DNA from: Diadema antillarum
Taxonomy: Eukaryota
Assembly (NCBI RefSeq): GCF_040938485.1
Contig: NW_027270973.1
Location: 992,001 to 1,056,000 of the forward strand
DNA: 64,000 nucleotides
Direction of reading: 5' to 3'
Both the position numbers and the translations under genes were made by a program. Shown here one piece after another: positions 37,835 through 57,758 of this stretch; the stretch's first letter is position 1, and each line of letters starts with the position of its first letter. The notes beneath the pieces were generated by a model, which was not told the DNA's origin, searched no databases, and worked only from the letters and a program-made list of their open reading frames with translations.

Positions 37835-40800
37835 CTAAAATGGCGTCTGGTGATCGGCGTCATTGATCACCGCTCCTGCAAGCGAAGGAGGACAGAAACA
37901 TGAAACACGATATTTATTCTAAGAGAACGCCGAACCAAGAAGACGACGATTCATTAATATTTGAAAGTCTCCTCTCCCTTGCCAATTATCCTGTTGGCTT
38001 TTTCTCAATCTGATCACATTCCAGTTTCCTCTCTTTTAACGTCATTACACCTTCAGATCTCTGAAGATAATTCTAAATTCAGCGGAAGTCAGGGATGGCA
38101 CATCCGACGCCAAAACTTCTAATTAAGAACCTACACCACTACAACTGAATACTAAAAACGATAATACGGGCCACACTTTGAATTTCGAGATCAGGAGCAC
38201 GTGTCCATCAAGAAGACGACGAATCGTTAATATTCGGAAGTCTCCTCTCTCTTACCAGTAATTATCCTGCTGGATCGTTCTCTATCTCTCATCCCAGCTT
38301 CCTCTCTTTTACTGAATACTGAAAACGATCATTCGTGTCAAACTTTGTATTTCGAGTTCAGAAGCCCGTGTCCTTATGATTGTTAGTTTAAGATTACCTC
38401 ACAGAGACTCTATGCTTTTGCCATGATGGACTGTCTATTTAATCATCACCATTGAATTACTTTCATTGTTGGCTTGAGATGGCCACTTACCACCATTATC
38501 CAGGCCCAGCTTCTCCTTGCGGATATCACTGCCAACATCAACAGACTCTACCGACTCATCGTCGCTGTCTTCATCACCAGAGAAGATGGCCACAAGTTTG
38601 AAGGCGATGTAGAACAAGAGGATGGATGTGGCGTCCACTGTGATGCCAATGAGCAGAGCAGGTGTGCGGTAGCTTGGGCGTGGCAGGAGGGTGTAGCAGC
38701 AGCTCCAGGCCACCAGGAAGCAGATGCTAAGGAGGCTGGTGTAGACGAGGGTACGGCGCTCTTTCTTGGTCGCACTGTCCTGGCTGCCTCCGGCAGAGAA
38801 GAAAGACAGGACGAATGTGAGGAAGACGAGGATGTAGACGTAGACCATGGAGAGGACGGTGGAGGAGTTGCTATGGTTACAGGCGATGCCAGCATATGCA
38901 GAACAGCCGAGACCATCAACTTCAAACATTTCAACCCCACTTGCAGGATCGAGGATGAGCCATTCGGTGACCAGAACGACCTCCGTGATCAAAAGAGTGA
39001 AGAAGAGAAGAATCTGAACCGGTTGGGCGGTGAAGGTAGAGTTGCTGAACTTCTTACACAAGTTGCTGCAAGCGACAGCTTTGGTTGCCAGGGCCGCATA
39101 GACGACGGCATAGGAGAAGCTGGTCATCCAGCGTTGCATACCACAGGAAGACTCTCCAGGAACCACCATGTACCACACGTTGTTCAGGTACATGAGGATG
39201 ACCCCGAGGGCTACCATGCACATCAGGAAAGGGTTAGCTCTCTTGATCTGGGAAGACTTGCGATGACTGACGAAGATGGGGATACTGGCCAAGGCCACAA
39301 GTCCTCCGACAGCAGCCACGATCAGCACCACGACCACCCAGGCTTCGGCGCCTTGATTCCACGACCAGCTGCTTGGAGGTTGCGCATCGATAACAGGACA
39401 CGAGGTGGGATCCTCCACCCGGGTCTCGCACACCGCCGGTGCTGAAATGGGTCTGTCCGCATCGGGGTTGTAGAGATAAATCCTACGGTCATCCATGGTC
39501 AGTTGTCCACTCACATACTGGCCGATCTGAGGAGACGACCAAAGAATGGAAATGATTCAATGTCTTTCATACATTTGCCGACCAAAGCAAATGCAGTCAA
39601 CCTTGCTTACAGCTTCTCTGAACAAACCATACCTGTCGTCCAGTCTAAGCTCAGAGAAATTTCAAATACTTAATTGGTATCATATATGAGATTTCGATTC
39701 ATGGAAGAATTGCCATTCATGAAAAACCATTGCCACGTGTGGGGTATTCTTATCATGGTCGGTCGTTTTTGTGTTTTTTGTGTCTGAACACGTAGGTTTT
39801 TTTTTTTCGAAGGGATGTACCTTCAATGCTTTCAGAGCACAAAACTCACATTCTGGCATTGTCGACTATAAATAAGAAAAAAAAATACAGGGAATGTGAG
39901 GAAAACAAAGAACTACCGCGACAGGATCGAAATATTCAAGATGAGGCTCAATGGACAAAAACTCTCAGTCTAAATCTTGAGGTTCTGATTCAAGTTCGTT
40001 GTCAGCAGCAGAAGCAACCATACGCAAGGCATTTTATTCTGTGTGGCTTCTTTTTTTTTCGGAGGGAACTCAATGTCATTGGTCCTCTGAGAGTTGCTCA
40101 CTCAGTTGCAAATGTGACCCCATACTCAGTTGCGACGTTATATTAAAATATAACTGCATTAAATTGAAATAAAATTGATGAAGAGCATGCTCAAACTCAA
40201 CAAAAACTTAAACTCAAACTTATGAAAAGATCTAGTTATCCCCAAATGCATTATGAAGGAGTGCAAAAAAAAAAAGTTATCTTACCGGGACAAAACTGCC
40301 TGTGATCCCGTCACCTTGGAAGTTGATGATGGAATATTCGGCGGGTCCCTGGCGATTCTCGAACCAGAACGGACGGCCGCCGGCGCCGGCCTCGACGTAA
40401 GCACTCTTGATGGCGTAGAGGATGTGGTGATAGTGAAGGTCGTAGAACTCGGAGCAGAGAGGAGCGGTCTCATTGATGGGCTTCAGAACATAGGCGGCGC
40501 GCTTGTACTCGTGCTCAACGTACTCACCTGATGAGATAATGGGGGGGGGGGGGGGGGGGGAGGGAGGGAGGGGAGGGGGATGGTCATCAGTTTTTTTAAT
40601 TTACACGACCAAGAGGGAACATGATGTATGAGTCAACGTCAATCATGGTATGATTATTATTGTGTTTTTCTCTTCTTGCAAGAAAATCTTTGTCCGAATT
40701 CGGTTCACTTTCCAACAGCTCTTCTAGCTCATCTCAAGGAAGACCATTTCTGAAAATGATTCTGTAAGCTACTTTACCACAAAATGGAGTAACTATAACT

Positions 40801-57700: not shown

Positions 57701-57758
57701 CCAGCGCGGTGGGCGCAGACAGCGCGCACAGGACGGCGACAAGAATTAGGCGCCTCAT
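37835..57758 (-). CDS. Class C (mGluR/CaSR-like) GPCR with signal peptide, three tandem Venus-flytrap domains, truncated cysteine-rich linker and 7TM; about 1780 aa, 22 coding exons
   Basis: Exons (minus strand): 57500-57758, 56974-57108, 54687-54853, 53872-54076, 52963-53171, 52312-52623, 51437-51620, 50708-50811, 50032-50226, 49181-49402, 48529-48805, 46996-47199, 45845-46146, 45003-45245, 44156-44404, 43675-43855, 42981-43133, 41941-42156, 41303-41509, 40286-40527, 38491-39526, 37835-37875. All introns are GT-AG and the phases chain without a frameshift (5343 nt). The N-terminus MRRLILVAVLCALSAPTALA is a signal peptide. VFT motifs such as LIGPFTSG, FLRTIPSDNVQAQ, LGWTYV..SEGSYGEGG, ILPGI, IAGIFPIH, NTWFYEYW..FEC and WIGSDKW recur in three sets. 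Read-through of exon 21 to TAG at 38435 gives a 1785-aa alternative. Confidence 0.93.
37937..38375. repeat. Diverged local tandem duplication inside the last GPCR intron
   Basis: aagaagacgacga..taatatt..aagtctcctctc..aattatcctg at 37937 and 38210; actgaatact.aaaacgat..tttcgag..cgtgtcc at about 38141 and 38311. Confidence 0.6.
38575..39345 (-). other. GPCR domain: class C 7-transmembrane region (7tm_3-like)
   Basis: Seven hydrophobic segments in ORF 38435-39514. Cys at the top of TM3 (SSCG) and in ECL2 (IACN), Lys in TM3 (ALATKA, cf. mGluR LLTKT), Glu before TM6 (KKERR, cf. FNEAK), and FKL in TM7 (cf. PKxY). Confidence 0.9.
39430..45119 (-). other. GPCR domain: Venus-flytrap 3 (membrane-proximal), about aa 968-1455
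   Basis: YMRIPGDFDI, YALDQINNNSKILPGIKLGLTVIDSC, IGVLGP, MGWRHVLFVYSHSYYG, GICV, WIGSDKW, NHWL, LINAVHVLAQALH..C, EYSIINFQ..IGQY. Confidence 0.9.
46781..46974. repeat. Small inverted-repeat element with degenerate TTAGGG-like core
   Basis: agggcaattacccccgaggacaattacccc ... ggggtaattgtccagggggtaattgccct flanking gggttagggttaggtttagg repeats. Confidence 0.65.
48056..48523 (+). mobile_element. TTAA-flanked non-autonomous DNA transposon (Kolobok-like) inserted 5 nt into a GPCR intron
   Basis: ttaaaggggcattccgg ... ccggaggtcccctttaa; homologous to 6229-6811. Confidence 0.75.
51864..52064. mobile_element. Harbinger-like MITE
   Basis: gggccccgtcttat ... ataagacagggccc termini with gattgatt internal repeats. 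Confidence 0.6.
53330..53582 (-). mobile_element. tRNA-derived SINE
   Basis: Minus-strand head gctgtggcataatggatacgactcccgaatctcaagcggaggacctgagtttgattcccg (A box and B box), central cccaggtgtataaatgggtacc domain, and a short (atgg/atag) repeat tail. Confidence 0.75.
54402..54574. mobile_element. hAT-like MITE with 8-bp TSD
   Basis: cagtggcggatccag ... ctggatccgcccctg; flanks atttaaag / atttcaag (7 of 8 identical). Confidence 0.75.
54960..56550. mobile_element. Composite repeat region with iterated catattacctgca motifs and hairpins
   Basis: gcaggtaatatgagac or its reverse complement at about 55099, 55279-55314, 56132 and 56524-56550; 16-bp-stem hairpin at about 55692-55735. Boundaries uncertain. 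Confidence 0.4.

What the first reader, a model, noticed from the sequence alone, without database searches (positions are those of the whole stretch)
37835..57758. Class C GPCR with three tandem Venus-flytrap domains on one 7TM
Seen in sequence: 22 exons with continuous phase encode one polypeptide of about 1780 aa, ordered signal peptide - VFT1 - Cys linker - VFT2 - Cys linker - VFT3 - short linker - 7TM. There is a single signal peptide, no internal stop, and two exons (51437-51620 and 45003-45245) each encode the end of one VFT and the start of the next. It is therefore not three adjacent genes merged by mis-prediction. Established knowledge: mGluRs, CaSR, GPRC6A, T1Rs, V2Rs and GABA-B each carry one VFT per protomer. 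Inference: this is a multi-sensor or spacer-extended class C receptor, possibly a chemosensory or nutrient receptor of a marine invertebrate. I know of no functional characterisation of such a receptor, but similar uncharacterised predictions may exist in other invertebrate genomes.
Basis: partly seen in the sequence, partly recalled or inferred. Interest (0 to 1): 0.93.

Follow-up and report, generated by a model that had tools for sequence, protein, structure and literature searches.

The report
Sea urchin receptor with three flytraps

Summary
On the minus strand, CDS 57758..37835, 22 GT-AG exons with continuous phase encode 1769 aa. The order is signal peptide, VFT1, Cys linker, VFT2, Cys linker, VFT3, short stalk, 7TM, and a tail ending -QTPF. 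There is no NCD3G domain. Exons 51620-51437 and 45245-45003 each encode the end of one flytrap and the start of the next.

The window comes from a Diadema-like urchin. The D. setosum orthologue is 95% identical, and all 22 of its exons have the same lengths. dN/dS is 0.12 overall and 0.07-0.15 in each flytrap.

S. purpuratus and Lytechinus have 1753-1773-aa orthologues, named "uncharacterized" in RefSeq. Related receptors with 2-5 tandem flytraps occur in crinoids, a starfish, a hemichordate, amphioxus, arthropods, molluscs and a nemertean. Their 7TMs form one clade. Their distal flytraps are orthologous across protostomes and deuterostomes.

An 8.2-kb uninterrupted ORF on an RNA-like contig shows a five-flytrap relative as one message. 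I found no transcript for the urchin gene itself.

Only VFT1 keeps the amino-acid-backbone signature. VFT3 lacks it but is the most conserved domain.

I found no paper describing this architecture. Verdict: a real gene and a new variant of a known kind. The mechanism is inferred.

The parts
57500..57758 (-). Exon 1: start codon, signal peptide (aa 1-20, MRRLILVAVLCALSAPTALA) and first strand/helix of VFT1
   Evidence: 96.6% identical to P0161
56974..57108 (-). Exon 2: VFT1 lobe 1 (aa 87-131)
54687..54853 (-). Exon 3: VFT1, holds signature residues S139, S162 and D182
   Evidence: Pfam ANF_receptor E=7e-12
53872..54076 (-). Exon 4: VFT1, holds Y210
   Evidence: Pfam ANF_receptor E=2e-6
52963..53171 (-). 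Exon 5: VFT1 lobe 2, holds D289
52312..52623 (-). Exon 6: VFT1 C-terminal part
   Evidence: Pfam ANF_receptor 270-351, E=1e-12
51437..51620 (-). Exon 7, first junction exon: last strands of VFT1, Cys linker 1 (C464, C469) and first strand of VFT2
   Evidence: the same exon is present in D. setosum and S. purpuratus
50708..50811 (-). Exon 8: VFT2
50032..50226 (-). Exon 9: VFT2
49181..49402 (-). Exon 10: VFT2 (signature positions are E579, R602 and S622)
   Evidence: Pfam ANF_receptor E=3e-11
48562..48805 (-). Exon 11: VFT2
   Evidence: Pfam ANF_receptor E=0.014
46996..47199 (-). Exon 12: VFT2
   Evidence: boundary corrected by hand to the GT donor
45845..46146 (-). Exon 13: VFT2 C-terminal part
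   Evidence: Pfam ANF_receptor 277-346
45003..45245 (-). Exon 14, second junction exon: last strands of VFT2, Cys linker 2 (C940, C944, C947) and first strand of VFT3
   Evidence: homologous exons P0163 and P0164 end at the same donor
44156..44404 (-). Exon 15: VFT3
   Evidence: Pfam ANF_receptor 6-80, E=2e-8
43675..43855 (-). Exon 16: VFT3
   Evidence: Pfam ANF_receptor 83-133, E=4e-8
42981..43133 (-). Exon 17: VFT3
   Evidence: 100% identical to P0161
41941..42156 (-). Exon 18: VFT3 (holds D1220)
41303..41509 (-). Exon 19: VFT3
40286..40527 (-). Exon 20: VFT3 C-terminal part
38491..39526 (-). Exon 21: last strands of VFT3, stalk of about 55 aa with two Cys (C1444, C1454), seven TM helices (aa about 1471-1725) and the start of the tail
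   Evidence: Pfam 7tm_3 E=4e-26
37835..37875 (-). Exon 22: micro-exon encoding ...AVINDADHQTPF and the stop codon; the C-terminus looks like a class I PDZ ligand
   Evidence: identical peptide in D. setosum; -QTPL in S. purpuratus, Lytechinus and Acanthaster

Best explanation
The stretch is one intact, expressed-type gene of a Diadema-like sea urchin. It encodes a 1769-aa class C (glutamate-family) GPCR with three complete Venus-flytrap modules in series on a single mGluR-like 7TM.

It belongs to an ancient bilaterian subfamily in which every VFT is followed by a linker of about 45-55 aa ending in a small Cys motif (P-x-S-x-C-x3-5-C-x1-2-C). The motif resembles the first part of the canonical cysteine-rich domain. 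The full cysteine-rich domain is absent.

The repeat probably arose and varied in copy number (2-5) by duplication or loss of exon blocks bounded by phase-0 introns. These introns sit at the same point near the end of each VFT (introns 6, 13 and 20 here).

Inferred mechanism:
- The membrane-distal VFT1 is the orthosteric sensor for an alpha-amino-acid-like ligand that is not glutamate. Its backbone-binding residues are kept, but the two basic residues that hold glutamate's side chain are not.
- VFT2 and VFT3 have lost the lobe-1 ligand residues but are under strong purifying selection. They act as a conserved relay or dimerisation stack, possibly with modulatory sites of their own.
- This stack passes the conformational change to the 7TM, which keeps the class C hallmarks needed for G-protein coupling.
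- The conserved -QTP[FL] end suggests anchoring by a PDZ scaffold.
For: Shown:
- 22 GT-AG exons in phase, giving 1769 aa.
- Junction exons encode a VFT end plus the next VFT start.
- One signal peptide and no internal hydrophobic segment.
- Three ANF_receptor domains, one 7tm_3 and no NCD3G.
- The D. setosum orthologue has all 22 exons of equal length. dN/dS is 0.12 overall, with VFT1 0.13, VFT2 0.145, VFT3 0.07 and 7TM 0.10. dS is 0.126, close to the intron divergence of 0.13.
- The same junction exons are present in S. purpuratus.
- Orthologues of 1753-1773 aa exist in Lytechinus and S. purpuratus.
- Relatives have 2-5 VFTs.
- All multi-VFT 7TMs fall in one clade, SH-aLRT 100.
- Distal VFTs form one clade at 100/98, ambulacrarian VFT2 at 97/96 and ambulacrarian last VFTs at 96/95.
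- L002 is a 10.2-kb contig with one uninterrupted 8.2-kb ORF encoding five VFTs plus the 7TM.
- Signature residues: VFT1 has S139, S162, D182, Y210 and D289. VFT2 has E, R and S at the first three positions. VFT3 has E, A and Y there.
- Identity to S. purpuratus is VFT3 74%, against VFT1 56%, VFT2 60% and 7TM 56%.
- Linker Cys residues are invariant across phyla.
- Introns 6, 13 and 20 are all phase 0 at the same or a nearby alignment column, 696/687/696.
- C1539, C1627, K1560, E1667 and K1721 are conserved in at least 90% of 40 class C rows.
- AF2 models have pLDDT 79 and 81, and Foldseek's top hits are mGluR ectodomains and full-length mGluRs.

Inferred: ligand class, relay role, dimerisation, G-protein coupling and PDZ binding.
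Against: - I found no transcript of the urchin gene. Two searches for spliced fragments gave only genomic exon read-throughs or nothing.
- Shorter isoforms from internal promoters cannot be excluded.
- The assignment of ligand residues rests on pairwise and multiple alignments at 20-30% identity. The D318 column is ambiguous for VFT2.
- In the starfish orthologue of VFT2, and in several modules of hemichordate, nemertean and mollusc relatives, the full signature is kept. 'One sensor plus relay' is therefore not a family-wide rule.
- VFT3's very high conservation could equally mean that it binds a conserved ligand or partner.
- AF2 pTM values of 0.54-0.61 give no trustworthy inter-domain geometry.
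- The stalk before TM1 is predicted with low confidence.
Confidence: 0.62

Rival explanations
1. Multi-sensor or coincidence detector. Each of the three flytraps binds its own ligand (amino acid, ion, sugar, peptide or protein partner), and the 7TM integrates them.
For: - All three VFTs are under purifying selection.
- VFT3 is the most conserved domain.
- In relatives, several modules of one protein keep the complete amino-acid signature. Examples are Tubulanus V1, V5 and most of V2-V4, Saccoglossus V3, and the Acanthaster VFT2 orthologue.
Against: In this gene and its echinoid orthologues, VFT2 and VFT3 lack three of the five backbone-binding residues. No alternative pocket was identified.
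Confidence: 0.22
2. Mostly structural or adhesive ectodomain. The stacked flytraps serve as a long stalk or trans-cellular/matrix contact, as in orphan class C receptors that work through protein partners, with little or no small-ligand gating.
For: - A very long ectodomain.
- A PDZ-type C-terminus conserved in ambulacrarians.
- Divergent TM7: AFKLV where canonical receptors have xPKxY.
Against: - VFT1 keeps all five amino-acid-backbone residues across about 200 My of echinoid divergence.
- The 7TM keeps the TM3-ECL2 disulfide and the conserved Lys/Glu/Lys positions.
Confidence: 0.1
3. Annotation artefact or isoform mixture. The locus really produces shorter receptors (for example VFT3 plus 7TM) and separate secreted flytrap proteins, and the long ORF is never made as one protein.
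For: - No transcript evidence for the echinoid gene with these tools.
- Some database relatives in the same clade are short, single-VFT models.
- An old S. purpuratus model, P0159, is clearly mis-merged.
Against: - Junction exons leave no room for a stop, a start or a signal peptide between modules.
- Exon lengths and phases are identical in D. setosum, and the junction exons are present in S. purpuratus.
- Linkers are under constraint and their Cys residues are invariant across phyla.
- A five-VFT relative is present as one uninterrupted 8.2-kb ORF on an mRNA-like contig.
Confidence: 0.06

Closest known systems
Metabotropic glutamate receptors (class C GPCRs; best sequence and fold matches are mGluR2/3 and mGluR4/7/8)
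   Same: - All three flytraps and the 7TM hit mGluRs first: phmmer E values of 1e-26 to 1e-41 for the VFTs and 4e-12 for the 7TM.
- Foldseek gives E values of 1e-30 to 1e-38.
- VFT1 keeps the residues equivalent to mGluR1 S165, T188, D208, Y236 and D318.
   Different: - Three VFTs per chain instead of one.
- No NCD3G cysteine-rich domain, only short Cys motifs after each VFT.
- The equivalents of R78 and K409, which hold glutamate's side chain, are Leu and Tyr in VFT1.
- The 7TM falls in a clade separate from single-VFT mGluR-like receptors.
Class IV mGluRs (DmXR/mangetout type; Ramos-Vicente et al. 2018, PMC6307864)
   Same: Backbone-binding residues are conserved while Arg78 and Lys409 are replaced, which in that paper predicts an amino-acid ligand other than glutamate. 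VFT1 shows the same pattern.
   Different: Class IV receptors have one VFT. That paper does not mention tandem VFTs. Whether the multi-VFT clade is related to class IV was not tested.
GABA-B receptor
   Same: - A class C receptor without a cysteine-rich domain.
- It works with a flytrap (GB2) that binds no agonist yet is needed for signalling (established knowledge). This is a precedent for non-binding but essential VFTs.
   Different: The two flytraps are on two separate subunits side by side, not in series on one chain. By sequence this 7TM and its VFTs are closer to mGluRs; no GABA-B chain appears among the listed PDB hits.
Bacterial sensor kinases with tandem periplasmic flytraps (BvgS, EvgS; PMC4352136, PMC5573083)
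   Same: Two VFTs in series ahead of the membrane. In BvgS a mobile membrane-distal VFT1 and a closed membrane-proximal VFT2 in an intertwined dimer set the state of the transmembrane helices (abstract). This is a working precedent for signalling through stacked flytraps.
   Different: A different periplasmic-binding-protein class, a histidine-kinase output, and no common descent with the animal repeat. It is an analogy only.
RefSeq predictions: D. setosum P0161, S. purpuratus LOC575563 (P0160), Lytechinus LOC129254394, LOC129281365, LOC121408446 and LOC121408508
   Same: Orthologues of 1753-1773 aa with the same domain order. P0161 is 95% identical with the same 22 exons.
   Different: All are named 'uncharacterized protein'. 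I found no paper that discusses them.

Membership tests
Class C (glutamate-family) GPCR | 7tm_3 heptahelical domain | tested here: met
   Pfam PF00003 E=4e-26 and 92.6 bits on the window exon. AF2 predicts seven helices plus an ECL2 hairpin at pLDDT about 90. Full-length mGluRs are the top Foldseek hits.
Class C (glutamate-family) GPCR | Extracellular Venus-flytrap (ANF_receptor / PBP type 1) domain | tested here: met
   Three copies are present: phmmer to mGluR VFTs and Foldseek TMt 0.75-0.84.
Class C (glutamate-family) GPCR | Conserved TM3-ECL2 disulfide and the conserved Lys (TM3), Glu (TM6) and Lys (TM7) positions | tested here: met
   C1539 and C1627 are invariant. K1560, E1667 and K1721 are conserved in at least 90% of 40 aligned class C sequences and are present in the window protein. 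Equating them with K3.50, E6.35 and K7.51 is from memory. The Pro of the TM7 PK motif is Phe here.
mGluR / CaSR / T1R-type class C receptor | Nine-cysteine domain (NCD3G) between the VFT and the 7TM | tested here: not met
   No PF07562 hit on P0161:1400-1769, on the two linkers, or on any exon. The stalk has only two Cys.
mGluR / CaSR / T1R-type class C receptor | One VFT per protomer | tested here: not met
   Three full-length VFTs on one chain.
Glutamate-binding mGluR (classes I-III) | Amino-acid backbone residues (mGluR1 S165, T188, D208, Y236, D318) | tested here: met
   Met in VFT1 only: S139, S162, D182, Y210 and D289. VFT2 has E, R and S and VFT3 has E, A and Y at the first three positions.
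Glutamate-binding mGluR (classes I-III) | Basic residues for the distal carboxylate (R78, K409) | tested here: not met
   The VFT1 equivalents are L64 and Y340, read from the alignments. The alignment around K409 was extended by eye, so confidence is moderate.
Multi-VFT class C clade (unnamed; defined here) | 7TM groups with other tandem-VFT receptors, apart from single-VFT mGluR-like receptors | tested here: met
   The split has SH-aLRT 100 on a quick tree of 58 rows. The nine single-VFT rows inside the clade are short models and look truncated.
Multi-VFT class C clade (unnamed; defined here) | Positional orthology of the modules, and the P-x-S-x-C...C(..C) linker after every VFT | tested here: met
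   Careful tree: distal VFTs 100/98, ambulacrarian VFT2 97/96, ambulacrarian last VFTs 96/95. Linker Cys residues are invariant.
Multi-VFT class C clade (unnamed; defined here) | Made as a single mRNA or protein | tested here: inconclusive
   Shown only for a five-VFT relative, the 8.2-kb ORF on contig L002. No transcript was found for the echinoid gene.

The most novel reading that the evidence does not exclude
Tandem-flytrap class C receptors are a distinct, ancient (pre-bilaterian-split) and so far undescribed branch of class C GPCRs, lost in vertebrates. They would use a serial, through-the-stack activation mechanism: ligand closure of a distal flytrap is transmitted through one to four further flytraps, joined by rigid mini-cysteine linkers, to a 7TM that has no cysteine-rich domain. 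Different lineages would have tuned how many modules still sense ligands. In sea urchins only the distal module does.
Probability: 0.4. Interest if true: 0.85.

Novelty: new variant of a known kind. Interest (0 to 1): 0.7.

Why it matters
Every class C GPCR activation model (mGluR, CaSR, GABA-B, T1R) assumes one flytrap per subunit sitting directly, or via the cysteine-rich domain, on the 7TM.

A conserved family with two to five flytraps in series raises a question that can be tested directly: how is a clamshell closure 15-20 nm from the membrane coupled to a heptahelical domain?

The family also offers natural examples of sensing and non-sensing flytraps within one chain. It adds an overlooked receptor class to invertebrate chemosensory and neuro-signalling repertoires, in urchins, starfish, amphioxus, molluscs, ticks, locusts and crayfish. 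It could also serve as a scaffold for engineered multi-input sensors.

For this locus, the result is a verified gene model and a concrete hypothesis naming the residues to mutate.

Tried and rejected
- **Transcript evidence for the urchin gene.** A search with the second junction exon returned only two genomic exon ORFs that read into the intron. A search with S. purpuratus residues 380-580 returned nothing. This says nothing for or against expression.
- **Automatic splice choice at exons 12/13.** My script picked a GC donor. Inspection showed the canonical GT/AG pair at 46996/46146, which matches the orthologue.
- **Read-through end of exon 21.** The read-through (KWPSQ...MIK*) was my first model. 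It was rejected because the read-through is not conserved in D. setosum, whereas the spliced micro-exon peptide is identical.
- **Paralogues in the window.** None; tblastn hits lie only at 38-58 kb.
- **Neighbouring long ORFs.** No Pfam hits.
- **Intron positions.** Those inside the three modules are only partly shared. Only the module-end phase-0 intron is clearly common, so I make no claim of a recent clean triplication.
- **Literature.** Seven full-text searches and six papers gave no description of eukaryotic tandem-VFT GPCRs. The library lacks most subscription journals, so this is not proof of absence.
- **AF2 inter-domain geometry.** pTM is too low to use.
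Full report
**What is there**

The window has about 40% G+C and two N gaps that lie outside the finding. On the minus strand between 57758 and 37835 I rebuilt the gene from scratch.

Stop-to-stop reading frames were scanned with Pfam. 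This gave three ordered passes through the ANF_receptor profile:
- 54896-52297, profile positions 51-351
- 49453-45830, profile positions 70-346
- 44518-41217, profile positions 6-295

These are followed by a 7tm_3 hit at E=4e-26 in the long last ORF.

A full HMMER scan of 1.8 billion representatives with the 7TM exon found a 1755-aa Lytechinus pictus protein as best hit. A word-index search with that protein then found a 1769-aa Diadema setosum protein, P0161. P0161 aligns colinearly to the window at about 94% identity.

Choosing GT/AG sites that keep frame and fit P0161 gave 22 coding exons and 1769 aa.

**Check of the observation**

- Exon 7 (51620-51437) encodes the last strands of VFT1 (VGSWAGSGSLNIQ...), a short Cys motif (PPSVCTTGSCP) and the first strand of VFT2 (DVFKIAGIFPIHDPG).
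- Exon 14 (45245-45003) does the same for VFT2 and VFT3 (ESTCRGLCAECE ... RIPGDFDIPAVLW).

Hydropathy finds only the signal peptide (residues 4-22) and the TM segments at 1475-1720. No second signal peptide or anchor exists.

Pfam on the orthologue cut into parts gives full-length ANF_receptor at 131-419, 505-905 and 997-1403, 7tm_3 at 1472-1719, and no NCD3G anywhere.

**Is it one functional gene?**

The D. setosum locus (L001) has all 22 exons with identical lengths and GT-AG borders, and it translates exactly to P0161.

Synonymous divergence (0.126) equals intron divergence (0.13). dN/dS values are:

| Region | dN/dS |
|---|---|
| Whole CDS | 0.12 |
| VFT1 | 0.13 |
| VFT2 | 0.145 |
| VFT3 | 0.07 |
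| 7TM | 0.10 |
| Linker 1 | 0.29 |
| Linker 2 | 0.10 |

All three flytraps and the linkers are therefore constrained coding sequence.

S. purpuratus (locus L003) has the same junction exons. I could not find a transcript of the urchin gene.

A relative, P0109, lies on a 10,192-nt contig assembled from run SRR32835171. It is one uninterrupted 8.2-kb ORF with UTRs, an upstream in-frame stop and a signal peptide, and it encodes five VFTs plus the 7TM. An intron-free 8-kb ORF for a gene family that has more than 20 introns is best read as mRNA. The architecture therefore exists at message level in at least one animal.

**A family, not an oddity**

Domain counting with a local HMM and source names give the following distribution.

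| VFT count | Taxa |
|---|---|
| 5 | Gastropods (Physella, Babylonia), bivalves (Argopecten, Sinanodonta), a nemertean (Tubulanus) |
| 4 | Saccoglossus, the crinoid Anneissia, Schistocerca, Procambarus, Ornithodoros, Centruroides |
| 3 | Echinoids, amphioxus |
| 2 | A second amphioxus gene |

The Acanthaster and Antedon models start inside a VFT and then have two more, so they are probably 5'-truncated.

In a 7TM tree all of these fall on one side of a branch with SH-aLRT 100. On the other side are 24 rows, all but one with a single full VFT; the five with a source name are from starfish, Saccoglossus, a scallop and Capitella, four of them called mGluR-like.

In a careful tree of 62 VFT modules:
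- the distal modules of ambulacrarians, lophotrochozoans and arthropods form one clade (UFBoot 100 / SH-aLRT 98);
- echinoid VFT2 groups with the second module of starfish, crinoids and Saccoglossus (97/96);
- echinoid VFT3 groups with the last module of those taxa (96/95).

The serial arrangement therefore predates the protostome-deuterostome split. Within the window protein the three modules are only about 30% identical to each other.

**How the repeat is built**

Every VFT in every member is followed by 40-90 residues. These run from the final strands (vGxW...L.l), through P-x-S-x-C-x3-5-C-x1-2-C, to the next 'PGD-i-igG-l' start. The linker Cys residues are invariant across 19 proteins from six phyla.

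Introns 6, 13 and 20 are all phase 0 and fall at the same or a nearby column near the end of each VFT. Exons 7-13 and 14-20 are therefore symmetric 0-0 blocks. That arrangement allows modules to be gained or lost in frame, which fits the 2-5 range. This last point is inference.

**Ligand sites**

phmmer alignments to mGluR4 and mGluR7, and a 68-module alignment, give the residues below. Canonical single-VFT controls show S, T, D, Y, D, apart from one gapped cell (D318, P0022).

| Module | S165 | T188 | D208 | Y236 | D318 |
|---|---|---|---|---|---|
| VFT1 | S139 | S162 | D182 | Y210 | D289 |
| VFT2 | E | R | S | (I/Y) | (V, ambiguous) |
| VFT3 | E | A | Y | Y | D |

This pattern holds in Diadema, Lytechinus and S. 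purpuratus.

The VFT1 equivalents of R78 and K409 are Leu and Tyr. [quoted passage not shown] These results agree with the earlier scan note s1-220807.

Two caveats:
- The starfish orthologue of VFT2, and several modules in hemichordate, nemertean and mollusc proteins, keep the full signature.
- VFT3 is the most conserved part of the protein between Diadema and S. purpuratus: 74%, against 56% for VFT1, 60% for VFT2 and 56% for the 7TM.

**Output side**

The 7TM matches mGluR2/3 best. It keeps the TM3-ECL2 disulfide and the conserved Lys/Glu/Lys positions. AF2 predicts seven helices and the class C ECL2 hairpin at high confidence, while the stalk of about 55 aa is uncertain. The V1-linker-V2 model has confident domains and a partly beta-structured linker, but pTM is only 0.54.

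No solved structure covers two flytraps in series; TMq is about 0.4.

The tail ends -QTPF. The ending is -QTPL in other urchins and Acanthaster, and S/T-x-hydrophobic in Antedon, Saccoglossus and Anneissia. This resembles a class I PDZ ligand, which is my inference from general knowledge.

**Mechanism proposed**

The steps after the first are inferred.
1. A distal amino-acid-type sensor (VFT1).
2. Two constrained, non-canonical flytraps joined by stiff Cys linkers, forming a relay and probable dimer interface.
3. A class C 7TM with no cysteine-rich domain.

Precedents are GABA-B, where GB2's non-binding flytrap is essential, and the bacterial kinase BvgS. In BvgS a mobile distal and a closed proximal flytrap in an intertwined dimer set the transmembrane state (PMC4352136).

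Rival readings are a multi-ligand integrator, a mainly adhesive ectodomain, and an annotation artefact. They are weighed in their own sections of this report.

**Novelty**

Orthologues are already in RefSeq as 'uncharacterized protein'. Seven full-text searches and six papers gave no description of tandem-flytrap GPCRs. The papers include recent surveys of class C architectures (PMC12716839, PMC3971589) and of echinoderm GPCRs (PMC6267866, PMC7042368). The eLife 2025 survey lists only ANF+NCD3G, ANF alone and Cache+EGF for metazoans.

I rate this a new variant of a known kind. The gene is real and the family is broad and old. Function is unknown, and the mechanism stands as a testable hypothesis.

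Noticed in passing
window 46856-46936 (intron 12): About 14 copies of AGGGTT, a rotation of the telomeric hexamer TTAGGG, at 72% match. This is an interstitial telomere-like array inside the gene.
   Followed up: no
window 51624-51740 (intron 6, just upstream of junction exon 7): Long (AG)n and (GT)n microsatellites directly abut the polypyrimidine tract and acceptor of exon 7. A TA repeat lies at 45658-45699 and GTTT-type repeats at 44901-44949, just downstream of the exon 14 donor.
   Followed up: no
window 38435-38490: If intron 21 is retained, the frame runs on to KWPSQANNESNSMVMIK* and the conserved -QTPF end is lost. The read-through peptide is not conserved in D. setosum. It is a possible minor isoform without the PDZ-type tail.
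   Followed up: partly
L002 (Logan SRR32835171 contig, 10,192 nt): An mRNA-like contig with an 8.2-kb ORF for a five-flytrap class C receptor, about 39% identical to the Argopecten protein. The gene caller's start lies downstream of a better Met with a signal peptide (MWKAVLVTALCVVPVATQ).
   Followed up: partly
P0159 (MetaClust, 2327 aa) and the Lytechinus paralogues P0151, P0152, P0153 and P0158: Camarodont urchins carry two or three close paralogues (87-91% identical). An old 2327-aa model has fragmented, repeated VFT hits and no 7TM, so it looks like a mis-merge of tandem copies. The Diadema window holds a single copy.
   Followed up: no
window 38474-39445 (+): A 323-aa ORF lies antisense to the 7TM exon. 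It sits in the G+C-richest stretch, and I read it as a by-product of the codon bias of the sense strand.
   Followed up: no
window 4762-5004 and 58614-58860: Two runs of N (243 and 247 bases). Both lie outside the gene and were left as they are.
   Followed up: no
window 1-37000 and 58000-64000: No relative of the receptor, and no Pfam hit on the four ORFs of at least 130 aa that I scanned there (two more overlap the first N run and were left out). No neighbouring gene was identified.
   Followed up: partly
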